This document shows, piece after piece, positions 2,261 to 20,000 of a stretch of DNA of 64,000 bases. A program made the translations under genes and the position numbers. The stretch is from the NCBI RefSeq assembly GCF_032191835.1, contig NC_083230.1, forward strand, positions 72,354,001 to 72,418,000. The letters are read 5' to 3'. Each line of letters starts with the position of its first letter. The stretch's first letter is position 1. The notes under the pieces were generated by a model. It was not told the DNA's origin. It worked only from the letters and a program-made list of their open reading frames with translations, and made no database searches. Origin of the DNA: Heteronotia binoei. Taxonomy: Eukaryota.

Positions 2261-2366
2261 TTTATTTATTTTTTGTACTTATATCCCGCCCTCCCTGCCG
2301 AAGCAGGCTCAGGGCGGCTAACAACAATTTAACATCAGACAGTAAAAACAATAAGCAAACAATTAA

Positions 2367-4287
2367 ATTAGTAATCCATTATCAATTAAGGTCCAATCGC
2401 TCCGCCATGACTGCCCTGCCAATTTAGATGCAGTAAGTGAACTCGAGGCCCAATGCATGTCTTCTGATTTAACCCTGGATTGCCTCGCCCCGCTCAGCTT
2501 GGAGGAAGTCGACAGAATACTTGGCACTGCACGATCCACAACTTGCGATCTGGACCCATGTCCCTCCTGGCTAATTAAGGCCTGCCAGGAGGAACTAAGG
2601 TGTCCTATACGGGACATCGTAAATCGATCCCTTTCAGAGGGTATTTTTCCAACACCCCTGAAAGAAGCAGTGGTCCGCCCTCTCCTGAAAAAAGTTACAT
2701 CAGACCCGGCCGAATTGGCACACTACCGACCGGTCTCAAATTTGCCCTTTTTGGGCAAAATTATTGAGAGGGCTGTGGCGTTGCAGTTACAGGATTTTTT
2801 GGAGGACGCTTCCACCCTGGACCCATGCCAGTCCGGCTTTCGCCCGGGCCATGGGACAGAAACAGTCTTGGTCGCCCTTATGGATGACCTCTGGCGGCAA
2901 CTGGACCGAGGCGGCTCGGCAGTATTGCTGCTGCTAGACCTGTCGGCTGCGTTCGATATGGTCGATCATCGGCTGCTGACCCGCCGCCTCGCTGACGCAG
3001 GAATTCGGGGGTTAGCCTTACAGTGGCTCTCCTCCTTCCTTGAAGGTCGGGGACAAAGGGTGGCAATTGAGGGGGAGCTGTCTCAGAGACACCCACTTTA
3101 CTGTGGGGTGCCTCAGGGGGCAGTTCTCTCCCCGATGTTGTTTAACATCTACATGCGCCCCCTTGCCCAGATTGCACGGAGGTACGGGCTTGGTTGTCAT
3201 CAGTACGCTGATGATTCCCAGATCTATCTATTGATGGACGGCCGGACTGGCAATGTCCCTATAAATCTGGACCGGGCGTTACAAGCCGTGGCTGACTGGC
3301 TCAGGCTGAGTGTGCTGAAGTTGAATCCGGCGAAGACTGAGGTCCTTTGCGTGGGCCGGGTCGGACCAGGAGGGGAGATCTCCCTACTGGCTTTTGACGG
3401 TGCGCCACTGATACCAGTGCGCAGGGTCAAGAGCCTGGGAGTGCTACTGGAATCCTCTTTATCAATGGAGGCCCAGATAGCTGCCACGGCTAGATCCGCC
3501 TTCTTCCACCTCAAGAGGGCGAGGCAGTTGGCTCCCTTCTTGGAATGCAGCGACCTAGCAACTGTGATCCACGCAACAGTCACCTCGAGACTAGACTACT
3601 GCAATGCCCTCTACATGGGGCTGCCCTTATGCCGAACACGGAAACTTCAGGTAGTACAGAACGCGGCGGCCAGGCTGCTGCTGGGACTACCTCGGTGGGA
3701 ACACATGCAGCCTGGGCTGCGGGACCTGCACTGGCTGCCGGTTGTGTACCGTGTTCGCTATAAGGTGCTGGTTATTACCTTTAAAGCCCTATATGGCCGA
3801 GGACCTGCCTACCTTAGGGACCGCCTCTCCCCATATGTTCCCCAGAGAGCACTGAGATCTAGCTCCCAAAACCTCTTAAAAATCCCTGGGCCAAGGGAGG
3901 CTAGACTGAAGACAACCAGGGAGCAAGCCTTTTCAGCAATGGCCCCTCGATGGTGGAATCAACTTCCAGAGATGGTGCGAGCCCTGCGGGACCTGAACCA
4001 GTTCCGCAGGGCTTGCAAAACCTCTCTGTTTCAGCTTGCCTTTGGGACAGAACCTGGTTAAACGGATCTGTAGCTATCCAGCCATCTTGTGCATGATTGG
4101 GATCTACAGCACTTTATAGCACCGTTTGATCCATCTAATTAACTATGTAACTGAATTGTATTTTAAAATTGTTTGTTTTATATTGTATTTTATTTATATC
4201 ACAGTGTTCCATGTCTGTGAGCCGCCCTGAGCCCGCCATCAGCGGGGGAGGGCGGGATATAAAAATAAACTTATCTTATCTTATCTT
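2367..4287 (+). mobile_element. 5'-truncated L2-clade LINE, young
   Basis: 10-bp TSD AAACAATTAA at 2357-2366 and 4288-4297; (TTATC)n tail; open RT ORF; CpGs retained; highly similar to the copy at 11764-16400. Confidence 0.92.
2457..4061 (+). CDS. L2 ORF2, reverse transcriptase and C-terminal part (endonuclease missing by 5' truncation)
   Basis: 534-aa ORF with CDLDPCPSWL, QSGFRPGHGTET, DLSAAFD, GVPQGAVLSP, YADD and SRLDYCN motifs. Confidence 0.9.
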   Translation: MSSDLTLDCLAPLSLEEVDRILGTARSTTCDLDPCPSWLIKACQEELRCPIRDIVNRSLSEGIFPTPLKEAVVRPLLKKVTSDPAELAHYRPVSNLPFLGKIIERAVALQLQDFLEDASTLDPCQSGFRPGHGTETVLVALMDDLWRQLDRGGSAVLLLLDLSAAFDMVDHRLLTRRLADAGIRGLALQWLSSFLEGRGQRVAIEGELSQRHPLYCGVPQGAVLSPMLFNIYMRPLAQIARRYGLGCHQYADDSQIYLLMDGRTGNVPINLDRALQAVADWLRLSVLKLNPAKTEVLCVGRVGPGGEISLLAFDGAPLIPVRRVKSLGVLLESSLSMEAQIAATARSAFFHLKRARQLAPFLECSDLATVIHATVTSRLDYCNALYMGLPLCRTRKLQVVQNAAARLLLGLPRWEHMQPGLRDLHWLPVVYRVRYKVLVITFKALYGRGPAYLRDRLSPYVPQRALRSSSQNLLKIPGPREARLKTTREQAFSAMAPRWWNQLPEMVRALRDLNQFRRACKTSLFQLAFGTEPG

Positions 4288-6812: not shown

Positions 6813-7611
6813 AGAAGGTAGAATGCTTTTTACACATAATTAAAAACAACAGTCTTAGCCAATGATAGAGTTTGGGTTACAAAATACTTAGTATGTCATG
6901 TAACTGGAAGTCCTAATACAGGAAGGAGACTATGACAAAATGCTGAAACTTGATGGGATGACACTCACAACTGGAATATTAGAATTCAGGGTTAAAACTT
7001 ATTTAAAAGAGACAGGCAAATGAGAATCCGGCCCCTTCCTGCCCGCACTGCTGCTTGGCGGTATAGGGCGGGGGCCGCATTTGCCTCCCCAGATGGAGCC
7101 GAGGCAAACGGATCTCCGCCCATCCGGGTATGGCTGGGGGCGTGGACGGGGGCTTTATTGGCCCAGCCAAGCCTCCTGTGGCGCAGTTTCTCGGGCACTT
7201 TCGGCTGAACGGGAGCGTATTCCGACGCTCCAGCCGATCGGCCTGGGGGGCTTTGCTGCGGCGGCATTGGCGGTGCAGCGACGGAGCTGAGGAGCATGCT
7301 CCGCTTCCATCCCTCTTCCGTTTGAAGGCCTGAGGCCACACACTGGTGCAGCGTCGGGTTCCCCCCCCTCCTCAGCTTTGGTGGCAGTGATTTGGGGGTG
7401 AAGCAAGGGTTGGCTGCCCCCACCCTCCCTCCTCACAATCGCGGTGTTCTGGGGATTGTTGGAGGACATTCTGTGTGCAGCTGCAGGCTGCAGTACTGTG
7501 GCCTTAACCTTCTGGGTTCATTTCCCCCCTCCTCTCACCCCCCCCACCCCAAGGTTAGCTTTGGTGACACCCTTCCTCCTGCTTAATGTTGATAAGGGGT
7601 TTAAGGCAGAG

Positions 7612-9187
7612 CGATGGCTCCTAGGAAGGGACAGGGCAGGTCTAAGGGCAAGCAGCCCCTGAAGAGAGTGCCCGGAAGGCGCATGCCCACTGAGCACCCT
7701 GGGGAAGTAGATGAGGCACACACCAGGCGTGCTATAATTGAGCAGCTTGCTGCATTAGAGTGGCAACAGAGTTTGGTCCCTGGGTCAACGTGCCAGCTAG
7801 AGGGTGGAAGGCTGCACGGATCTCTACCAGGGCCTTCAAGCAGGAGGTCCTGGCACGTCTTTCTACTTTACAGGATATGACCATGCGGCCTGGTCCTTCG
7901 GGAGTGCCGAGCTGGGATCCACCGGACAACAACCCAGATGATGACGATGAGGTTAATAGTCTGGATGGGGCAAGTCTGGCGGATCTGGAGGTCCGGCGCC
8001 AGTGGTGTTAGCTGTTAATGCGGATGACTCTGATGGTAAGCATGTCTGCCGTGGTAATAATAGTGGGTGGCCCTGGGGGGGGGGGGGTTGGGGGCCCCTC
8101 TGCATTACGGGTGCGGCTGGCTCTGCGGCCATGTTCGGTACGGGATGTGTTCGGGGGTCACCTAATTTATCCTGTCTGTCAGGGGCTTGGGTCCCTGGGA
8201 CTCATGGGCAGGTTTTACCATGGGGGTCTGCTGAGGTGTCTTTGGTGGCTGCTACCCCATCTACCTCGTCCAGGGCTTTGACCCAGCAGTTATCGGTTGG
8301 GTCATTACCGTGGGGTCATCAAATGAGTGGGCAATGGCCAGCCGGATGGCCAGCCGCCCAGTGGGGGGGATGGGGCTTGGCCCCAACTCCCTATGGGGCA
8401 GTTCCTTTTCAGTGTCGTCCATTCGGTGACACCGCCATGCCCCTGAGGATCATTTGACAGTGTCTACCAGAGAAAAGATCTTGCGTGGGGAGTATGTGGA
8501 TGTTTTTAGCCTTCTCTATAGGGAACTCGAGAAGAAGGACAAGGACGAACTGGAGGATAAGGATAAGGAGACACTCAAGCGCAGAAAGATTGAGAGGAAT
8601 TGGGCCAACTGGTTAGCGGGGTTTTTGATTTATGCGGGGGTGATAGCGCGGGCACAGCCTTTACGGGCGGCTCCACTATTCCAATACTGCAACATCATTT
8701 ACAAGGCTTATACAGACTTTGCGGGTGCTGCATGGCTGCAGTACGACGAGGAGTTCCGTATGAGGGCAGCATTGAACCCCGCAATTCTCTGGGACCAGAT
8801 TAACCAGCAGCTGTGGCTGCAGCTCACGTCTCCGGCTAAGCCTAATACCGGTGGCAGGTCGGACAGCGGTCATCTTGTGAGTACAATACCATAGACCTTT
8901 ATTGGCATTAACATCTTGTGAGTAAACAGGCAAGTGTAGTGGGTCCCCGCACAGCAGTGGGGCAGTCGGTTCAACCCCGGCTGCTGTGTTGGGAGTACAC
9001 GTCGCAGGGCGTGTGCAATAGAAAAACGTGCAAGTACAAGCACGAGTGCCCGCTGTGTGGGGGTTCGCATGCATTATCGGCATGCAATAAATCCAAGCCC
9101 AGACCAGGGAATAAGCGGTCAGGTGGCAGCGGGAATACCCAATCAGCTAACAAAAGAGCCCAGCCCCATCAAGCTGATGGTACTTAA
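7612..9187 (+). pseudogene. gag-like ORF1 of the YR retrotransposon with C-terminal CCCH and CCHC-type fingers
   Basis: Starts MAPRKGQGRSK, then is frameshifted. It contains REKILRGEYVDVFSLL...WLQYDEEFRMRAALNP...W, typical of DIRS/Ngaro gag, and CWEYTSQGVCNRKTCKYKHECPLCGGSHALSAC. Confidence 0.8.
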
Positions 9188-9950
9188 GGATCTTTTGGCA
9201 GAGTACCCAAAGGTTGGGGACAGGGAGTATCTGTGGGAAGGATTTTGTTGTGGGTTTCGTATCCCATTCCAGGGCCCTAGAGGACCCTGTATGGCAAGGA
9301 ATTTACGTTCAATCCAGGGGATGGAACATGTGGTGAGGGATAAGATCGGGAAGGAGTGCAAGGAGGGCTGGATGTTAGGCCCTTTTGATGAACCCCCTGT
9401 CCCGAATTTGCAGGTATCCCCTTTAGGAGTGGTGCCCAAGAAGGCTCCGGGGGAGTTCTGGCTTATTCACCATTCGCCCTACCCAAAAGGGGGGTCGGTG
9501 AATGATGCCATTCCCGACTTCCTAGCTACAGTTCGGTATACCTCCTTCGACCAGGTGGTCAAAGTGGTATGGAGTTGTGGGATTGGGGCGGAGATGGCGA
9601 AATGCGACATTAAGTCTGCATTTTGCCTTCTGAAGGTGCACCCCGATGATTTTGAACCTTTGGGTTTTATGTTTGAGGGTAAGTTTTATATGGACAGGGC
9701 CTTGCTGATGAGTTGTTCCATCTCTTGTTCAGCTTTGAACGTTTTAGCACTTTTTTGGCTGGGTCCTGTGCGAACGGTTGGGCTCAGCTAATTCAGTTCA
9801 TTATCTGGATGATTTTTTGTTTGTGGGCCCGCGGGGGTCGGGTCAGTGTGCCCGGCTGCTTCAGTCCTTTTTACGGTTGGCTGAGGACCTGGGGGTCCCG
9901 CTGGCCCATGAAAAGACAGAGGGTTCTTCGTTAGTATTGACTTTTCTGGA
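9150..9950 (+). pseudogene. Reverse transcriptase of the YR retrotransposon
   Basis: SPLGVVPKK..GEFWLIHH, GGSVND, AKCDIKSAF and HYLDDFLFVG motifs. Frameshifted, with an apparent deletion after LTFL near 9947. Confidence 0.9.
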
Positions 9951-10414
9951 ATGCAGCAGGATTTTGAGGTATGGGAGCAGTTTTTGTCCTCATTTAATGG
10001 GGTTTCCTTTTGGCGCAAGGATATGAGAATTGAGGCTGATCGGACGCCGCTGGATCCATTGGTTTTGGGGTATACTTTCAAGGGCATTGGTGTGCTGAAA
10101 GTTGGCCCAGCGAATGGTTGGGCAGTGAACTATGTCGCAATTTGACCTTTCTTGAGTTTTTTCCTATAGTAGTAGCTGTTCAGTTATGGGGAGCGGAATT
10201 GGCTAATCATGTTGTGCATTTCTGGTGCGACAACATGGCTGTAGTTCATGTTATCAATACATTGACTTCTAAATCCGTTCTGGTTATGAGACTGGTTAGG
10301 GCATTCACTTTATGTTGTTTAAGTCTGAACATTTTATTTCTCGCTAAGCATGTGCCAGGTGTGTGCAATGGTGTGGCGGACACTCTGTCTCGCTGGCAGA
10401 TGGAGCGATTTTGA
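9951..10414 (+). pseudogene. RNase H of the YR retrotransposon
   Basis: TFLEFFPIVVAVQLWG...FWCDNMAVVHVIN...AKHVPGVCNGVADTLSR, a DIRS-type RNase H. Confidence 0.88.
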
Positions 10415-11163
10415 CAGCTTGCACCAGAAGCTGACCTCCTGCCGGCCCGGATGCCCCCAGAGATGTGGCAGCTTGGAGAGTGAGGCTGACTGGGCAATGA
10501 TGAGAGTTGAGGCTGACCGGGCAATGATGTTAGCTCTGGCTCTCAGTACCAGGAAGGCCTATAATCGCTCTGTTAAGCAGTTCCATGCATTTAGGGAACA
10601 GGTAAGGTTGGGCAGGCTTTGGCCCATTCCAGGGTCACACCTCATGCAGTTCTACGTCCATTTGAAAGGTAAGGAACTTGTAGTTAAGTCTATAAGGGCC
10701 AAGCTCGCAGCCTTAGCGTTTACAAGTAAAATACAGGGTTTTACGGACACTTCAAGTGATTTTAGGCTTTGTAAGATGTTGGAGGGTTGGGCCCGGGAGC
10801 AGGGCCCTCGGCCCGACACTCAGGAACCCCTTTTCACCTTCTGTTTTAAAGGGATTGCAGGCAGTTTGGCCTGGACTTTGCTCCTCAAAGTTCGAGGCTT
10901 TATTATTTCAGGCTGCAGCTATGACAGCCTTTTTCGGGGCGCTCAGGGTCAGCGAGCTTGTGGTTAGCTCTCACCATGACTCTTCTGGCCATTCCCTTCA
11001 GTCTGGTGATTTGAAAATACAGGGTGATTGTGTATCTATTAAGGTTCAACAGTCTAAGACCGATCAGAAACAGAGGGGTACTGTTATCACCTTTGGTTCG
11101 TGCCTAGATCAGGAAATTTGCCCTGTGATCACCCTGAAGAGGTATACTGCAGCAAGGGGAGAT

Positions 11164-11400
11164 AATAATAATAATAACATTTTATTTATATCCCGCCCTC
11201 CCCGCCAAAGCAGGCTCAGGGCGGCTAACAACATCTCAATCCATACAATAAATTATACAACAGGTTTTAAAATCACATTCACTTAAAACATTCCAATTAA
11301 AATTAACATTCCTGGTGCTACTCTATTAGACATAAATATTATGGCAGAATCACTTAAGGCGAATCATCAGTTGTTCAGTCAGTTAAAGGCCATCCTAAAA
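11164..11400 (-). mobile_element. Severely truncated L2 3' end inserted antisense in the YR ORF
   Basis: (TTA)n tail, the L2 terminal motif GCCGCCCTGAG...GGGCGGGATATAAA, and ORF2 end FRMAFN* on the minus strand; putative AGAT TSD (11160-11163 / 11453-11456). Confidence 0.85.
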
Positions 11401-11453
11401 AGGTTGCCCCATGCCGTGTTTTGTTCAATAAAGTTGCCCTGTTTATTTACCCA
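11401..11453 (+). repeat. Captured copy of the Ngaro 3' end (matches 17400-17452)
   Basis: 52 of 53 bases identical by direct comparison. Confidence 0.95.
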
Positions 11454-12019
11454 GATGAGGCCGGCCCCTTATTTTGTCATGAGGACCAGTCACCTTTGAC
11501 CAAGTTTCAGTTCTGGACCATCACCAGCAGGGCCTTGAATAGGCTAGGGCTGGGTGGGGTCAAATTTGGTACCCACTCTTTTCGCATTGGGGCAGCATTT
11601 ACAGCGGCTGCTATGGGGTATCCTGGAGCAGCCATTCAGAGAGTGGGCCGTTAGCGGTCCACAACATATAAGGGTTATGTTGCCCATTGGATACCCAACA
11701 GGCTGATGTTTGATATGTTGTTTCCAGTTTTGTGTGGTTCACGTTGTTCCTTTCTATTTTTTATAATAATAAATAAATAAATAAATAAATTTTATTTTTA
11801 TATCCCGCCCTCCCCCACCAAAAGGCGGGCTCAGGGCGGCTCACAGACATGACTACGTCATGATTCAATTAAAAGCAGATAAACATTATGAATACAATAC
11901 AATTACATATATAGATTAAAATACATAAAAATAGGTGCTATAATTTCTGATGTCACAATTACATATTATCAGCTTCAGTTACAACATAAGATGGCTAGAG
12001 TTAGAATGATTTTATCAAG

Positions 12020-14999
12020 TTAGTCTGGTCCTAATTCAAATGCGAGTTGGAAAAGAGAGGTTTTGCAAGCCCTGCGGAACTGGTTCAGGTCCCGCAGGGC
12101 TCGCACCCCCTCTGGGAGTTGATTCCACCAGCGCGGGGCCACTAATGAGAAGGCTTGCTCCCGAGTTATCTTCATTCTAGCCTCTCTTGGCCCAGGGATT
12201 TGTAGGAGGTTTTGGGAGCTAGATCTTAACGCTCTCCTGGGGATATATGGGGAGAGGCGGTCCCTGAGGTAGGCAGGTCCTCGGCCATATAGGGCTTTAA
12301 AGGTAATAACCAGCACCTTATACCGAACGCGGTAGACGACCGGTAGCCAATGCAGATCCCGCAGCACCGGCCGCACATGTTCCCACCTAGGTAGTCCCAT
12401 CAACAGCCTGGCCGCTGCGTTCTGCACTACCTGAAGTCTTCGCGTTCGGCACAAGGGCAGCCCCATGTAGAGGGCATTGCAGTAGTCTAGTCTTGAGGTG
12501 ACCGTTGCGTGGATCACAGTTGCTAGGTCGTCGCGTTCCAGGAAGGGAGCCAACTGCCTCGCCCTCTTGAGATAGAAGAAGGCGGATCTTGTGGTGGTAG
12601 CTATCTGGGCCTCCATTGATAGCGAGGATTCCAGTAGCACCCCCAGGCTCTTGACCCTGCGCACTGGTGTCAGTGGCGCACCGTCAAAAGCTGGCAGAGT
12701 AATCTCCCCCCCCCGGTCCGTCCCGACCCACGCAAAGGACCTCAGTCTTCGTTGGATTCAACTTCAGCCCGCTCAGCCTGAGCCAGTCAGCCACGGCCTG
12801 TAACGCCCGGTCCAAATTTGTAGGGACATCACCAGTCCGGCCTTCCATCAATAGATAGAGCTGGGTATCATCAGCGTACTGATGACAACCAAGCCCATAC
12901 CTCCGGGCAAGCTGGGCAAGGGGGCGCATAAAGATGTTAAACAATGTCGGGGAGAGAACTGCCCCCTGAGGCACCCCACAATGAAGCGGGTGTCTCTGAG
13001 ACAGCTTCCCCCCAATTGCCACCCTTTGTCCCCGATTTTCAAGGAAGGAGGAGAGCCATTGTAAGGCTAGCCCCCGAATTCCTGCGTCGGCGAGGCGGCG
13101 GGTCAGCAGCCGGTGGTCGACCATGTCGAACGCCGCCGACAGGTCGAGCAGCAGCAATACCGCCGAGCCGCCCCGATCCAGTTGCCGCCGGAGGTCATCT
13201 ATGAGGGCGACCAAGACTGTTTCCGTCCCATGGCCCGGGCGAAAGCCAGACTGGCATGGGTCCAAGGTGGAAGCGTCTTCCAGAAAATCCTGTAACTGCA
13301 ACGCCACAGCCCTCTCTATAATTTTGCCCAAAAAGGGCAAATTTGAGACCGGCCGATAATGTGCCAATACGGCCGGGTCTGATGTAGCTTTTTTCAAGAG
13401 AGGGCGGACCACTGCCTCTTTCAGAGATGTTGGGAAAACACCCTCCGAAAGAGATCGATTTATAATGTCCCGTATAGGACATTTCAATTCCTCCTGGCAG
13501 GCCTTAATTAACCAGGAGGGACATGGGTCCAGATCACAAGTTGTGGATCGTGCAGTGCCAAGAATTCTGTCAACTTCCTCCAAGCTGAGCGGGTCGAAGC
13601 AGTCCAAGGTTACATCCGAAGACACGCATTGGGCCTCAAGTTCACTTACTGCGTCTAAATTGGCGGGGCAGTCGTGGCGGAGCGATTGGACCTTATCTGC
13701 AAAAAACTTCGCAAAAGCCTCGCAGCCTATCTCCAATTCCTTAGCTTTTGGGTTGCCCTGTGGCAGTGAAGTAAGGTTCCGAATTATTCTAAACAATTGA
13801 GCTGGGCGCGAATTTGCAGATGCAATCTTGGTCGCAAAGTATGTTTTCTTTGTGGCCTTGATTGCCATCTCATAGGTCTTCATAAACTTCCTATAAGATG
13901 TTCTAGTCGCTTCGTCGCGGGTACGCCGCCATTGCCTCTCTAGCCGTCTAAGGCCTTGCTTCAGCCGGCGCAGTTCCGGGGTATACCACGGAGCCGGCTT
14001 AGTCCGAGGCCGCAGAGGACGCCGAGGTGCAATCTCCTCGATGGCTCTGGAGAGCCGATTATTCCAGGACTCAACCAGGCCATCGAGAGAGGTGCCAGAG
14101 GGCCAGGGATCCCGCAGAGCCATTTGGAACCGTTCCGGGTCCATCTGGCTCCGCGGGCGAGCCATAATAGGCTCCTCGCCTAAACAGGTTTGGGGAGGCA
14201 AGTCTACACGGGCCTTGAGGGCAAAGTGATCCGACCATGGCACCGCCTTGGCGGTTATATCGCTCACAACAACCCCGGCCGCAAAGATCAGGTCTAACAT
14301 GTGACCAGCCTGGTGAGTGGGGGTTACAACAAGTTGAGAGAGTCCCAGTGTCGCCATGGAAGACACTAGGTCCATCGCCTGACTGGAGGACGGGTCATCA
14401 GCATGGACGTTGAAGTCACCCAGGATTATCAACCTTGGGTGCTCCAACGCCCAGCCCGTCGCCGCCTCCAGTAGGGATGGTAAGGCGCTGGCTGGTGCGT
14501 TAGGCGTACGGTACACCAGCCAGACCGCCAACCCCTCTCCAGCCTCCCACGCCAGGCCGGCACACTCAATACCTTCAATCTTTGGGGCCGGGAGTGCCCT
14601 GAAGGAGTAAGCCTCCCGTACAAACAATGCCACCCCTCCCCCCCGCCCACTAGTCCGTGATTGATGTAGGACTGAGTAACCTGGAGGAGTTGTTTGCGCG
14701 AGGGCCACTGTCTCACCCTCCCGGGTCCAGGTTTCAGTCACGCAAGCCAGGTCCATATTTTGTTCGAGAAGAAATTCTCGAAGAATTGAGGTCTTATTAT
14801 TAATGGACCTGGCGTTGCACAACACCAATGACGGAGGTGGGTTATTCCGTCTGGCCCTGCTACCTGTCTCCCTTGGGATGGGACGCAGACTGGAAGAGGA
14901 CCGAGCACTGTCTTGTCTCTGTCCTCTTCCCTTATAATATCTGCTCCCACCGCTGTATCTCCCCCTCCCCAGGAGCACTGGGATCCCTGAGCCTGCCAT
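12020..14999 (-). CDS. L2 ORF2 (APE endonuclease + RT), intact except for one frameshift in a G/C homopolymer near 12706-12714
   Basis: 771-aa ORF with LCNARS, ACVTETW, VYRTP, GDFN and SDH endonuclease motifs plus DLSAAFD, GVPQG and YADD, continued by a 214-aa ORF (SRLDYCN...FRRACKTSLF). Confidence 0.9.
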
Positions 15000-16379
15000 C
15001 TCTCGCTGGTGGCAACTGCTAAGTTCACCACTATCAGATTGGAATCAAGGATATTCCACTAGCTCGACCCACTAGGTCCTGATAATCTAATTGACCCACA
15101 AATTTGAGAATCTTCCCTCCCTCAGTTTCTTATATATATTTGGTAAATTGACTCCTGTAGCAAATTAATTTAATCCCTCCCACTATTTTAAATTAACCAG
15201 CTAAAATTCATACAATTCAGTCCAGCTAAGAAATTCATACAATTCAATCCAAATATACAATAAATTACTCTAATGTGTCAATTAATAACAATCCAATTTA
15301 TCAGTAGGTTACGAGGTGCAGTTGTAAAGTGCAGTGCAAAATCCTCTCATAAAGATAGTGAGGTAGCAACAGAGTACTGTGGGTATTGCTGCAAAGATGT
15401 TTAGCAGTCAATGTAGGTTAAAGTGCAATGGCAGGCCAATGTGGGTTAAAGTGCAATGCAACGCCAGAGTTCCAGTCTAAAACTTTAGCAGCAGAGTTGT
15501 TATATAGATGTTCTTTAGATGTTCTATAGATGTCCTGTGTGGTTTTGTTGGTCGTAGGCTCTGAATACCAGATCTTGTGGTAAGGGGACTACCCGATGTT
15601 TCCTGCATAGGCTGGTGGGTCCGCAGTGAGTAAAAACCCCCCACGTACTCCCCTCGCCACGCAATGGGGTCCCCTCCCGCTTTGTCTATAGGGGCGACCA
15701 GTTCGTAGTTGGCCCCATTCAGCCTATACATCCCGTCGCAGACCACCCAGTTCACCTGCGTCAGTTGACCGCGTCGCTGATTCCACCCTCGGCTCCAGTC
15801 TCAGCCCTCTTCCAACGCAAACCAGCAGCTCCGGCCTCCGTCGACTGCCGGACCGCGGCGTCAATTCCACGCTCGGCCCGGGCGTTCGTATCACTGTCCC
15901 GGTCGGTCGGGCCGTAGTCCACTCCGCCGCCGCCGCAATTTCCAGCTGGCAGGCACCGCCCCCAGTCCAACTCAGTTGTTCGGCGTTCGATGTTGGGGCG
16001 TTCGGCGTTGGGGCGTGCCTCGCGGCCGCCGGGCACAGCGTCAGCCTCGGCGTCAGTGCCAATTCCACCTCCAGTCCATCGCCCGGACCGCCGCCGCAGT
16101 TGGTTTATCAAACACCGCACGCTGCCTCGACTATGGTCACGGTCGGGCTGGAGCCGGAGCAGATCTCACCCCGGCTAGACTCGGCGTTTCAGCGTTTCAG
16201 ACTCAGCGTTTCAAGCCGGCGTTAGAGGCGTTCCCTTGGCACCCCGACTCTCCCAGGTAGTCCGTTGACTCACCCCCTACCAGGGATTGATATCAGTCTG
16301 TCTGGTTCTCTCAGGAAGTGGTGAAAATATAAGAAAAGGACCCTATTATCAGGAGCTCTAGCACCTGAGCTCCTGCCTA

Positions 16380-16400
16380 GGTCGCCATCTTGAAACCGAC
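16380..16400 (-). promoter_or_regulatory. YY1-like motif (CAAGATGGCG) at the L2 5' end; putative internal promoter
   Basis: The plus strand reads GTCGCCATCTTGAAAC. YY1 sites are known at LINE 5' ends (L1); function here is inferred. Confidence 0.5.
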
Positions 16401-16441
16401 ATAAGCCAATCTTACAATGTTCTAAGGAACATCCTGACAAC

Positions 16442-16505
16442 CTGGGTGGCTCGCCCTATCCGGACAGGGAAGGGTCAGGGAGTTTGGCCTATCTGGGAGT
16501 TTTAG
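16442..16505 (+). repeat. Captured copy of the Ngaro 3' end (matches 17338-17401)
   Basis: 64 of 64 bases identical by direct comparison. Confidence 0.95.
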
Positions 16506-17092
16506 CTGCTGTGGCGCGGCGTGAGAGGCGGAGGATTCTGATCGCTGGCCACAGCATGGTGTTTTGGGCAGCCCACCAGGCCCGGTGTTCACCAATTGGA
16601 TCGCAATTGGGGCTCAGTGAGTGGGCTGTGGTTGAGTGTCAGGGGCATCAGGGCCTTCAGTGGTCCGGGCTCCTGCCTCTCCTTTTCCAAGGGAGGAATG
16701 GTCCTCTGCCTCATGTTTTGGTTATCCACCTTGGTGGTAATGATCTTGGCTTGCTGAAGGGGAAGGCCCTTTCACTGCAGGCGATTGAAGACCTCAGAGT
16801 GATACAGAGCAGGTGGCCCGAGGTGCTGATTTTGTGGTCCACCATCCTTCCCCGCAGGGTTTGGAGGGCTGCCTGGGACCCTGCAGGGATCGAAAGGGCT
16901 TGGCACAAGGCGATTAAGAAGGCACTGTGTGGAGGCTTAGGTGTTTACCTGCCTCATCCTGCTATAAGGTTGGAGTCGGCGGACCTATATTGGCAGGGCG
17001 GCATCCACCTGTCCGTAAAAGGTAACAGGGCATTTTTGCTTGAACTATGGCTGGGGCTTCGGTTGGCCCAACCGGTGGGCCCAACTGCCTAA
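16506..17092 (+). CDS. SGNH/GDSL-family esterase-like ORF of the YR retrotransposon
   Basis: ILIAGHSMVFWA (block I Ser), VIHLGGNDL (block III), WSTILPR, and LYWQGGIHLS (block V, with the usual Asp apparently replaced by Gly). The frame is open for about 195 codons and has no ATG upstream of the catalytic Ser. Confidence 0.82.
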
Positions 17093-20000
17093 GTGGAGGC
17101 TTGGCATTGTGGTGGCAGGGGTTTGATTTGGGCTATGTAGTTAACCGGTGAGCACCCGTTTCAGGGAAAGTAGTGGGCTGGGACAGCAGCTGGGCTGTAT
17201 GGCTCTGTGCGGTGATGCCCGCTATAGGGTTCCCTCCTCTGGCTGGCCACTCCTGAGTGGGCGGCATTGCCACTTGGGGGTATTCCCGGCCTTTGCCGGC
17301 CTAGCAGTAGCCAGTACAAACTGGCTACTGCCGGGGGCTGGGTGGCTCGCCCTATCCGGACAGGGAAGGGTCAGGGAGTTTGGCCTATCTGGGAGTTTTA
17401 GGTTGCCCCATGCCATGTTTTGTTCAATAAAGTTGCCCTGTTTATTTACCCAATACAACGTGTTGTCTCATTCTTCCAACTGGGGGGGGCAAAGGGCAGA
17501 GGCATAGCAATATATGTGAAGGAGGTATATACTTGTGAGGAAATATGTGAATCTGAGCATGGCAGCTCAGTTGAGAGTCTCTGGGTAAAAATAAAAGGAG
17601 TAAGAAATAATAGTGATATTATTGTGGGGGTCTGCTATAGACCACCAAGCCAGGCAGAGGACTTGGATGAGATACTCCTATAACAGTTTGCAAAGGTCTC
17701 CAAAAGAAGGGATACAGTGATCATGGGAGATTTCAATTACCCAGACATCTGTTGGAAGTCCAACTCTGCTGAAAATGAAAAGTCAAATAGATTCCTGACT
17801 TGTCTAGCTGACAACTTCCTTTTCCAGAAAGTGAAGAAGGAAACAAGGGGATCTGCTATCTTGGGTTTGATTCTCACTAACAAGGAAGAATTGATTGAAG
17901 ACGTGGAAATAGTGGCACCCAGGGCAGTAGTGACCATGTGATTTTGGAATTTACAGTCTTAGGGAAGGGGAAAGCTATACGTAGTCAGACTTATAGATTG
18001 GACTTCAGAAAGGCAAACGTTGATAAACTTAGAACTATGCTGGGTAATACCCCATGGTCATAAATACTTAGGAGGAAGGGGGTTCAGGAGCGGTGGGAGT
18101 TTCTTAAAAGCAAAATACTGAAAGTGCAATCATAGATGATTCCTATGAGAAGAAAAAATGAAAAAAAGTCTAAAGAAGCCAAAGTGGCTTCATAAACAGC
18201 TCTCTAAAGACTTGAGAAATAAAAAAAATAGTCTTTTAGGAATTGGAAGGAGAGCCTTATAACCAAGGATGAATATAAACAAATCACCAGTGCTTGTAGA
18301 TAAAAAGTTTGGAAAGCTAAAGCTCAGTATGAGTTTAGGCTGGCAAAAGATGCTAAAAACAAAAAAAGGGTTCTTTTCTTACGTTCAGAGTAAAAAAAAG
18401 ACCAAGGACTTGGTAGACCCATTGTGAGGGCAAGAAAGTGAAATTTTAACAGGTAATGAAGAGAGAGCAGAACTGCTCAATTCCTACTTTTCCTCAGTTT
18501 TCTCTTCTGAGGGAAACGATGCTCAACATGGCAAAAACAGAACATATAAGAAGGGTATGAAGTTCCAACCTAGGATCAGCATAGGGGTAGTACATAAACA
18601 CCTAGTTTCTTTAAATGAAACTAAATCCTCAGGGCCAAATAAATTGCATCCAAGGGTTCTAAAAGAGCTTGCAGATGTAATTTCTGAACCTCTGGCTATT
18701 ATTTTTGAGAATTCTTAGAGAACAGGAGAGGTGCCGGAAGATGGGAGGCGGGCAAATGTTGTCCCCATCTTCAAGAAGAGGAAAAAAGATGATCTGGGTA
18801 ACTACCAACCCGTCAGCTTGATGTCTATATCTGGAAAAGTTTTAGAACAAATCATCAAATAGTCAGTCCTGGAACATTTAGAAAGAATGGCTGTGATTAC
18901 TAAACCAGCATGGGTTTCTCAAGAACAAGTCATGTCAGACTAACCTGATCTCTTTTTTTGAGAAAGTGACTACCTTGCTGGATCAGAGGAATGCTGTAAA
19001 CATAGTTTATCTTGATTTCAGTAAGGCTTTTGATAAGGTTCCACATACTATCCTTGTTGACAAGTTGGTAAAATGTGGTATCCTGTTACCATTGGGTGGA
19101 TCTGTAACTGGCTGACAGATCGCACCCAAAGAGTGCTTGTGAATGGTTCCTCATCCTCATGGAGAGGAGTGACAAGTGGAGTGCCTCAGGGATCTGTCCT
19201 GGGACCTGTTTTGTCCAACATCTTTAAAAAATGATTTGGATGAACGAATAGAGGGAATGCTTATTAAATTTGCCGATGATACTAAATTGGGAAGGGTTGC
19301 AAATACAATAGAAGACAGAAACAGGATACAGGATGACCTTGGCAGGCTGGAAAACTGGGCTAAAATCAATAAAATGAATTTTAAGAGAGATAAATGTAAA
19401 GTTCTGCATTTAGGTAGGAAAATTCCAATGCATGGTTATTGGATGGGGGAGACTTGTCTTAGCAGTAGTATGTGTGAAAAGGATCTAGGGGTCTTAGTGG
19501 ACCATACACTGAACATGAGTCAACAGTGTGATGCAGTGGCTAAAAAGGCAAATGCAATTTTGGGTTGTATCAACAGAAGTATAGTGTCCAGATCACGTGA
19601 TGCAATGGTATCACTTTACTCTGCTTTGGTAAGACCTCACCTAGAGTATTGAGTTTTGGGCACCACATTTTAAGAAGGCTCTAGACAAGCTGCAACGGGT
19701 CCAGAGGTGGGCGACGAAGATGGTGATGGGTCTGGAACCAAGTCCTATGAGAAAAGGTTGAAGGAGCTTGGGATGTTTGGCCTGGAGAGGAGGTGGTTGA
19801 GAGGTGATATGATCACCATCTTCAAGTACTTGAAGGGCTGTCATAGAGAGGATGGTGTGGAATTGTTTTCTGTGGCCCCAGAAGGTGGAACCAGAACCAA
19901 TGGGTTGATATTAAATCAAGAGTTTCTGGCTCAACATTAGGAAGAACTTCCTGACAGTTAGAGCAATTCCTCAGTGGAACAGGTTTCCTTGGGAGGTGGT

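What the first reader, a model, noticed from the sequence alone, without database searches (positions are those of the whole stretch)
11401..17452. Both L2 insertions captured abutting pieces of the host element's own 3' end
Seen: 11401-11453 matches 17400-17452 (52/53) and 16442-16505 matches 17338-17401 (64/64). Each piece sits at the 5' junction of a different antisense L2, about 6 kb and 1 kb from the source, and together they tile 17338-17452, meeting at TTTT/AG. The first piece ends at CA, 21 nt after AATAAA (17426), where transcript cleavage would be expected. The second joins its target through TTTTAG microhomology. Inference: the target end was extended on a Ngaro 3'-end template (RNA, cDNA or circle) by template jumping during L2 integration, or the L2 endonuclease nicked TTTT/AG in that repeat. 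This points to physical coupling between a LINE and a YR-retrotransposon replication intermediate.
Basis: partly seen in the sequence, partly recalled or inferred. Interest (0 to 1): 0.8.

Follow-up and report, generated by a model that had tools for sequence, protein, structure and literature searches.

The report
L2 insertions borrowed host Ngaro tail
Two separate L2 LINE insertions inside one lizard Ngaro retrotransposon each carry, at the L2 5' junction, a short copy of that Ngaro's own 3' tail; this looks like an unusually long, long-range case of the known templated filler at LINE junctions, not proof that the two element types are coupled.

Summary
16442-16505 equals 17338-17401 (64/64) and 11401-11453 equals 17400-17452 (52/53). 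These are the only short high-identity repeats in the 64 kb window.

Both pieces are foreign where they sit:
- X1 splits a continuous tyrosine-recombinase frame and has a 3-4 bp target duplication.
- Y1 lies between the polypyrimidine tract and the SGNH-hydrolase exon.
- Seven gecko Ngaro copies and the read depth show neither piece at those places in normal copies.

Each piece abuts the 5' end of an antisense L2: one a 237-nt 3' fragment, the other apparently full length.

New points:
- The source 115 nt starts 2 nt after the strongest hairpin of the 3' repeat.
- It ends 21 nt after AATAAA, about 41 nt before the element's DNA end.
- The inner borders show microhomology: AGG with L2a, TTTTAG with the target.
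- Y1 shares a private base and a rare 25-nt segment with this copy's Y2.

Best reading: templated 5' filler made during L2 integration, copied from this host copy's own transcript end or DNA. Coupling to a Ngaro replication intermediate is possible but not shown. The junctions could not be checked read by read.

The parts
7021..17493 (+). Host Ngaro-type YR retrotransposon (gag, RT, RNase H, YR, SGNH hydrolase, one 3' B repeat), inserted in a CR1 ORF2. GGCAAA stands at both borders (7015-7020 and 17488-17493).
   Evidence: ORFs. Nucleotide and protein homology to Eublepharis Ngaro L001. CR1 reading frame on both flanks.
11164..11400 (-). L2a: 5'-truncated L2 fragment holding the 3' UTR, the last few ORF2 codons and an (ATT)n tail. 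Its 5' end is at 11400-11403.
   Evidence: The tail is similar to the L2b tail. Reads of the L2a family continue from 11403 into the L2 ORF2 end at 12058/12059 (joints).
11401..11453 (+). X1: 53-nt copy of 17400-17452. It shares AGG with the L2a family sequence at its left border and 1 nt (A) with the target at its right border.
11454..11456 (+). GAT, duplicated from 11161-11163: the 3-4 bp target-site duplication of the [L2a+X1] insertion.
   Evidence: The two YR pieces map to adjacent gecko codons and overlap by this one codon.
11763..16441 (-). L2b: apparently full-length L2 with an APE endonuclease + RT ORF2 (12684-14999) and a 5' region reaching about 16441. It is inserted after the T-run 11757-11762 of the polypyrimidine tract before the hydrolase exon.
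   Evidence: Pfam Exo_endo_phos and RVT_1. Sequence. Read depth stays multi-copy up to at least 16417.
16442..16505 (+). Y1: 64-nt copy of 17338-17401. Its last 6 nt (TTTTAG) could equally come from the target's splice-acceptor region.
   Evidence: Depth falls from about 275 at 16458 to about 10 at 16491 and rises to about 83 at 16506 in run X1.
17300..17335 (+). Strongest hairpin of the B repeat: 12 perfect base pairs with an ACAA loop, -25.4 kcal/mol. It ends 2 nt before the start of Y.
17338..17452 (+). Source segment Y2+X2 (115 nt) inside the single B repeat.
17426..17431 (+). AATAAA. The CA at 17451-17452 is 21 nt downstream, and a GU-rich stretch GTGTTGTCTC lies at 17460-17469. The block is conserved with gecko Ngaro.
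17494..19940 (+). 3' part of the CR1-like LINE that the Ngaro interrupted. Its 5' part ends at 7020.

Best explanation
One Ngaro copy, itself sitting in a CR1, was hit twice by L2 LINEs in antisense orientation. Each insertion came in as a unit made of the L2 plus a short filler at the L2 5' junction. Both fillers are copies of the same 115-nt stretch of this host copy's 3' repeat. That stretch runs from just after a strong hairpin (17338) to the predicted poly(A) cleavage site (17452). The fillers were made at the 5'-joining step of target-primed reverse transcription. A 3' end that could not yet pair with its partner was extended on a second template, then annealed by microhomology. This is the 'annealing / 5' extra nucleotide' pathway known for L2-clade LINEs. 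The inner borders were set by microhomology: AGG between the truncated L2a cDNA and the template, and TTTTAG between the template and the L2b target. The two microhomologies touch in one TTTTAGG heptamer, which is why the pieces abut. The template came from this very copy. I favour its own transcript 3' end, or a short cDNA of it, over its duplex DNA, because both outer borders fall on RNA landmarks. Shown: the anatomy, the non-native status of the pieces, the microhomologies, and the variants shared with the local copy. Inferred: which enzyme did the copying, the nature of the template, and the order of the events.
For: The repeats are exact and unique in the window. The YR frame is continuous across [L2a+X1], with GAT duplicated. 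L2-clade TSDs peak at 3-5 bp (PMC4245944). L2a family reads continue from 11403 into the L2 body, so L2a is truncated exactly where X1 starts and shares AGG with it. Seven gecko Ngaro loci have the order A1-body-B1-A2-B2, with no B fragment in the YR or before the hydrolase ORF. The gecko acceptor reads ...tctctttgcag|GTGCGG where the window has the T-run, L2b, Y1 and then CTGCTG. Read depth at the Y1/ORF3 border shows that family copies do not have Y there, and no 16480-to-16506 joint was listed. Y starts 2 nt after the strongest hairpin of the repeat. X ends 21 nt after a conserved AATAAA, upstream of a GU-rich block and about 41 nt before the DNA terminus. Y1 and Y2 share A at 16491/17387, while 12 of 12 reads from other copies have G. 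Most family copies also lack the 25 nt at 16481-16505 (joint 16480 to 11401, 51 reads). About 40-50% of zebrafish ZfL2-2 copies have 5' extra nucleotides, many templated from flanking sequence (PMC2666801, PMC4245944).
Against: Known L2 5' extra nucleotides are described as 'several' nucleotides taken from immediately flanking sequence. Here they are 53-64 nt taken from 0.9 and 6 kb away. No poly(A) follows X1, as a polyadenylated RNA template might leave. The poly(A) site and the RT stop at the hairpin are predictions, not measurements. The true 5' terminus of the L2b family is unknown, so the L2b/Y1 border is placed only to within about 20 nt. The reads listed did not include any with the locus's own A at 16491, so the sequenced animal may differ from the assembled one, and no junction was confirmed by a spanning read. 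Two hits on the same 115 nt remain a coincidence unless that segment is unusually available.
Confidence: 0.55

Rival explanations
1. The same templated filler, but copied from the host copy's duplex DNA in cis. The L2 cDNA end or the broken target end invaded the B repeat 0.9 or 6 kb away by microhomology, was extended by the L2 RT or a repair polymerase (SDSA or polymerase-theta-like templated insertion), and then rejoined.
For: The private A at 16491 and the rare 25-nt segment point to this very copy. DNA in cis is always available. L2 5' extra nucleotides are reported to derive from flanking DNA (PMC4245944). The 6-nt TTTTAG and 3-nt AGG microhomologies fit.
Against: This model does not explain why the outer borders fall at a predicted RNA cleavage site and 2 nt after the strongest hairpin. 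Reported flank-derived fillers are short and local.
Confidence: 0.25
2. One reading: the L2 reverse transcriptase jumped onto a Ngaro replication intermediate supplied in trans. A candidate is a short minus-strand cDNA running from the RNA 3' end to the hairpin pause. This would show physical coupling of LINE integration with YR-retroelement replication.
For: The 115-nt unit has the borders expected of a nascent minus-strand cDNA. Its polarity fits a jump of the growing L2 cDNA onto an antisense single strand. DIRS-1 does make linear single-stranded extrachromosomal cDNA (PMC7192593).
Against: The variants shared only with the host copy argue against a family-wide pool. Both captures lie inside the same Ngaro copy, which a trans pool does not predict. 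How Ngaro primes its first strand is unknown.
Confidence: 0.1
3. The L2 endonuclease nicked TTTT/AG (17399/17400) in the B repeat, and the two nicked ends served as template ends. The shared border is then an enzymatic cut.
For: L2b itself inserted after a T-run followed by AG in normal copies, so TTTT/AG resembles its nick site. X starts and Y ends at that site.
Against: The two insertions are different L2 subfamilies and therefore separate events, yet the source site is intact today. L2a inserted at AGAT/GAGG, not at a T-run. Microhomology alone explains both borders, and AGG occurs only 4 times in the 115 nt.
Confidence: 0.05
4. The pieces travelled with the L2 RNAs as 5' transduction or chimeric source elements nested in other Ngaro copies. 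Alternatively they are native Ngaro repeats or an assembly artefact.
For: 5' transduction is known for LINEs. Ngaro elements naturally repeat their 3' region as B1 and B2.
Against: Transduction would need two different source loci whose transduced pieces happen to abut and happen to match the recipient's private variants. Native status is contradicted by the YR frame, the gecko architecture and the read depth. The clean TSD and microhomologies are not what a misassembly gives, and the window has no gaps.
Confidence: 0.05

Closest known systems
5' extra nucleotides (5' EX) of L2-clade LINEs, annealing pathway of 5'-end joining (ZfL2-1/ZfL2-2; PMC4245944, PMC2666801)
   Same: The filler lies between the LINE 5' end and the target. 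It is templated from an identifiable sequence of the target region. There is microhomology at the borders, the TSD is 3-5 bp, and the host LINE belongs to the L2 clade.
   Different: The filler is 53 and 58-64 nt rather than 'several' nucleotides. The source lies 0.9 and 6 kb away rather than in the immediate flank. Two independent insertions drew on the same 115-nt source, whose outer borders coincide with RNA landmarks.
Template-switch chimeras of L1 (U6-L1 and mRNA-L1 chimeric retrogenes) and end-to-end template jumping of R2 reverse transcriptase (references cited in PMC2666801; otherwise my own knowledge)
   Same: A second nucleic acid is copied at the LINE 5' end during one integration event. 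One piece ends at the template's 3' terminus.
   Different: Those chimeras join the two RNAs in the same sense. Here the Ngaro piece is antisense to the L2. So the template was either an antisense strand read by the first cDNA, or the sense RNA read from the second nick.
Twin priming (5' inversion of L1; discussed in PMC4245944)
   Same: The 3' end freed by second-strand cleavage primes a second reverse transcription. The two cDNAs then join by microhomology. This would give the observed polarity if the Ngaro sense RNA was the template.
   Different: Twin priming copies the LINE's own RNA and yields an inverted LINE segment. Here a bystander sequence was copied. PMC4245944 reports 5' inversions only for human L1 in human cells.
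Split direct repeats of Ngaro/PAT elements (A1-B1-A2-B2; PMC4157794)
   Same: The duplicated sequence belongs to the B repeat, which normal elements carry twice.
   Different: Normal B copies are about 430 nt, lie after the hydrolase ORF and flank A2. The two pieces here are 53 and 64 nt and sit inside the YR gene and before the hydrolase exon.

Membership tests
Ngaro (YR retrotransposon) - host element | Encodes RT/RNase H and a tyrosine recombinase | tested here: met
   The YR C-terminal piece hits Pfam Phage_integrase weakly (E 1.8e-4, below the curated cut-off). Both YR pieces are 53-70% identical to the gecko element's YR. The RT/RH region aligns to L001 at 67%. Pfam did not call the RT piece that was submitted.
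Ngaro (YR retrotransposon) - host element | Split direct repeats A1-B1-A2-B2 with the internal repeats downstream of the YR (PMC4157794) | tested here: not met
   This copy has A1 and a single B and lacks A2-B2. Six of seven gecko relatives show the full A1...B1-A2-B2 order and one (L003) shows no A or B repeat pair, like the window copy. Loss by B1 x B2 recombination is inferred.
Ngaro (YR retrotransposon) - host element | No methyltransferase domain (distinguishes Ngaro from DIRS/PAT) | tested here: inconclusive
   The ORFs scanned gave no MT hit, but not every ORF of the element was scanned.
L2-clade LINE - the two inserts | APE endonuclease + RT ORF2, microsatellite 3' tail, TSD of 3-5 bp | tested here: met
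   L2b hits Exo_endo_phos and RVT_1. The tails are (ATT)n and (AAAT)n. L2a has a GAT/AGAT TSD. Placement in the L2 clade by phylogeny was not tested. The C-terminal HWLPV motif is recognised from my own knowledge only.
LINE 5' extra nucleotides / template-jump filler | Extra sequence exactly between the LINE 5' end and the target, templated, with microhomology at the borders | tested here: met
   L2a ends at 11400-11403 by family reads. AGG and TTTTAG overlaps are present. For L2b the 5' terminus is known only to about 20 nt.
LINE 5' extra nucleotides / template-jump filler | A few nucleotides derived from the immediately flanking sequence | tested here: not met
   The pieces are 53 and 64 nt, from 896 and 5999 bp downstream.
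L1-type chimeric retrogene (small RNA-LINE fusion) | The captured RNA is fused in the same sense, 5' of the LINE | tested here: not met
   The Ngaro pieces are on the + strand and both L2s are on the - strand.
5' transduction | The same extra sequence is present upstream of a source L2 copy and in sibling copies | not testable with these tools
The read output did not list the relevant loose ends.

The most novel reading that the evidence does not exclude
The 115 nt (17338-17452) may be a discrete molecule: a short Ngaro minus-strand cDNA, or an R-loop-exposed strand, running from the RNA cleavage site back to a hairpin where synthesis pauses. L2 reverse transcriptase would use it repeatedly as a bridging template. 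If so, these two scars would be the first sequence footprints of where a vertebrate Ngaro starts and pauses first-strand synthesis, and of a LINE enzyme meeting a YR-retroelement intermediate.
Probability: 0.12. Interest if true: 0.75.

Novelty: new variant of a known kind. Interest (0 to 1): 0.45.

Why it matters
How the 5' end of a LINE is joined to the chromosome is the least understood step of LINE integration. Natural scars with long, traceable fillers show which templates the enzyme can reach. These two scars are long enough to read all four borders. They suggest that an L2 enzyme, or a repair polymerase, can copy tens of nucleotides from a sequence kilobases away, or from the target gene's own transcript. 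The outer borders also give a testable prediction for the unmapped poly(A) site and for a strong reverse-transcription stop in a vertebrate Ngaro. As a single locus it does not change the picture of LINE or Ngaro biology. A genome-wide census would decide whether it is a curiosity or a rule.

Tried and rejected
1. Native split direct repeats as the explanation: rejected. Gecko Ngaro loci L001-L007 show A1-body-B1-A2-B2, with no B fragment at either position. The YR frame is continuous across X1. Read depth drops at the Y1/ORF3 border.

2. Laying reads to confirm each junction and to see the normal joint 11163 to 11454. Only the 15 best-supported of 200 joints, and 18 of more than 7,000 loose ends, were printed. 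The locus's own junctions and the normal YR joint were therefore not visible. This is no evidence either way.

3. RNA runs to map the poly(A) site: none was listed.

4. Looking for an interrupted gecko Ngaro with similar captures. The one long gene model (L008) holds several Ngaro fragments, and no such junction was identified. Too few loci were examined to say anything.

5. A hairpin formed by Y itself, to explain the shared inner border: not supported. The minimum-free-energy fold is not better than shuffles (z -0.69), and the centroid structure keeps only the upstream hairpin.

6. Conservation of the 17300-17335 hairpin in gecko: the strongest gecko hairpins lie elsewhere in B.

7. Pfam on the ORFs of the L2b 5' region gave nothing, so the L2b 5' terminus rests on read depth and position only.

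8. Single-event and rearrangement histories (deletions in tandem copies, an L2 first inserted in B and then moved): rejected by reasoning. None yields X between two exactly adjacent YR codons with a TSD.
Full report
**Observation.** The two repeats exist exactly as described. 16442-16505 equals 17338-17401 (64/64). 11401-11453 equals 17400-17452 (52/53), with the one mismatch at 11416 G against 17415 A. The source intervals overlap by AG and tile 17338-17452. A self-comparison of the whole 64 kb window finds no other repeat of at least 22 nt at 94% or more. The window has no gaps.

**Layout.** ORFs, Pfam and comparison with a leopard-gecko (Eublepharis macularius) Ngaro give the following map:
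- gag, RT, RNase H and the N-terminal two thirds of the tyrosine recombinase (YR) run up to 11163;
- L2a, an antisense L2 3' fragment, 11164-11400;
- X1, 11401-11453;
- the YR C-terminus, from 11454;
- a polypyrimidine tract ending in the T-run 11757-11762;
- L2b, an antisense and apparently full-length L2, 11763-16441, with endonuclease + RT ORF2 at 12684-14999;
- Y1, 16442-16505;
- the SGNH-hydrolase ORF, up to 17092;
- one B repeat, which contains Y2 and X2.

The whole Ngaro sits inside a CR1 ORF2. The left flank reads ...NLFKRDRQ and the right flank reads KGRGIAIYVKE. GGCAAA stands at both borders, at 7015-7020 and 17488-17493. The element's DNA terminus therefore lies about 41 nt beyond the end of X. 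Homology to the gecko B repeat also continues past 17452.

**Are the pieces native?** They are not.
- In seven gecko loci the architecture is A1-body-B1-A2-B2. One locus (L003) shows no A or B repeat pair, like the window copy, which keeps a single B. No B fragment lies in the YR or before the hydrolase ORF.
- The two YR pieces map to adjacent gecko codons and overlap by one codon, GAT (11161-11163 and 11454-11456). [L2a+X1] is therefore one insertion with a 3-4 bp target-site duplication. That is the length typical of L2-clade LINEs (PMC4245944).
- Before the hydrolase exon the gecko reads ...tctctttgcag|GTGCGG. The window reads ...ctatttttt, then L2b, then Y1 ending in ttttag, then CTGCTG.
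- In the reads of the same species, depth in run X1 is about 275 inside Y (16458), about 10 in its last 25 nt (16491) and about 83 just after it (16506). At 16506, 165 of 170 reads across the three runs show G where this copy has C. No joint from 16480 to 16506 was listed. Family copies therefore do not carry Y before the hydrolase exon.

**Do the pieces sit at L2 5' junctions?**
- For L2a the answer is yes. 85 reads of its family (three runs, two joint variants) run from 11403 into the end of L2 ORF2 at 12058/12059. L2a is truncated at 11400-11403 and shares AGG with X.
- For L2b the answer is probably yes. The region up to at least 16417 is multi-copy (about 50 reads across the three runs against about 2x expected for single copy, assuming a genome of about 2 Gb). 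The family's exact 5' terminus could not be read.
- L2a and L2b have different 3' UTRs; only 62 nt near the tail align, at 85%. They are separate events.

**New anatomy of the source.**
- The 115-nt source starts 2 nt after the strongest hairpin of the B repeat. That hairpin spans 17300-17335, has 12 perfect pairs and scores -25.4 kcal/mol.
- The source ends at a CA 21 nt after AATAAA. This is followed by GTGTTGTCTC, in a block conserved with gecko.
- Both outer borders are what a reverse transcriptase copying the Ngaro transcript from its cleaved 3' end would produce: a start at the RNA end and a stall at the hairpin.
- The inner borders are microhomologies. AGG occurs four times in the 115 nt. 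TTTTAG matches the target's acceptor region, and TTTTAGGT is unique in the window.
- The two microhomologies touch in one TTTTAGG heptamer. That explains the abutment without a nick at TTTT/AG.

**Cis or trans?** Most family B copies lack the 25 nt at 16481-16505: 51 reads join 16480 directly to 11401. Of the reads from the few copies that keep this segment, 12 of 12 have G at 16491, whereas Y1 and Y2 both have A. Y1 was therefore copied from this very copy or a near-identical one. This speaks against a general pool of replicating Ngaro. It fits either the copy's own transcript or its own DNA. One caveat: no listed read showed the locus's own A, so the sequenced animal may differ from the assembled one.

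**Mechanism.** L2-clade LINEs join their 5' ends by annealing. About 40-50% of zebrafish ZfL2-2 copies carry 5' extra nucleotides, many of them templated from flanking sequence. This has been read as trial extensions that create a stable synapsis (PMC2666801, PMC4245944). The present scars fit that scheme. The L2b filler ends in a 6-nt match to the target end, and the L2a filler starts at a 3-nt match to the cDNA end.

The polarity (Ngaro sense, L2 antisense) allows two routes:
- the growing L2 cDNA jumped onto an antisense strand, which could be the bottom DNA strand or a Ngaro minus-strand cDNA;
- the target's second-strand 3' end primed on the sense Ngaro RNA, which would be twin priming on a bystander RNA.

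I cannot separate these routes. The RNA landmarks at the outer borders favour an RNA-derived template. The cis signal and the literature favour local DNA.

**Verdict.** Its explanation is a long, long-range variant of a known LINE 5'-junction phenomenon, drawn twice from the host copy's own 3' end. The claim of coupling between a LINE and a YR-retroelement replication intermediate is not supported by the evidence available. Other first-stage notes in this genome mention template-switch scars at L2 5' junctions. These are unchecked, and a census would be worthwhile.

Noticed in passing
window 6850-7020 and 17494-19940: The Ngaro is inserted inside the endonuclease domain of a CR1-like ORF2 (…ETWWDDTHNWN…NLFKRDRQ | KGRGIAIYVKE…). 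GGCAAA is present at both element borders. This resembles the short crossover homology (AAT) seen at the gecko element's borders.
   Followed up: partly
window 7021-17493: This Ngaro copy has A1 and only one B repeat, with no A2-B2. Gecko locus L003 likewise shows no A or B repeat pair. This may be the YR-element counterpart of solo-LTR formation by B1 x B2 recombination.
   Followed up: partly
window 16481-16505 (= 17377-17401): Most copies of this Ngaro family in the species' reads lack these 25 nt: 51 reads join 16480 directly to 11401. The gecko B repeat has a homologous stretch, so the majority subfamily seems to carry a deletion that removes the TTTTAGG site.
   Followed up: partly
window 16506 and 11653: 16506 is C here but G in 165 of 170 family reads; it is the first base after the predicted splice acceptor of the hydrolase exon. 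11653 is A here, giving TAG (a stop in GR*RS), but G (TGG, Trp) in other copies. This copy's YR is therefore also broken by a point mutation.
   Followed up: no
L001-L007 (Eublepharis macularius) and proteins P0001-P0016: NCBI gene models of about 338 aa join the Ngaro gag N-terminus to the SGNH hydrolase across a span of about 4.6 kb. This agrees with other first-stage notes that predict a spliced subgenomic mRNA.
   Followed up: partly
window 15204-15251, 15409-15464, 16386-16397: The L2b 5' region holds two short tandem duplications. On the L2 sense strand it also has CAAGATGGCGAC about 45 nt from its 5' end, which resembles a YY1-type box near LINE transcription starts (from my own knowledge, not tested).
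   Followed up: no
window 2387-4272 (+) and 2273-2326 (-): A second L2 of the L2b family (87% identical, 5' truncated) lies here, with an antisense L2 tail fragment directly upstream of it.
   Followed up: no
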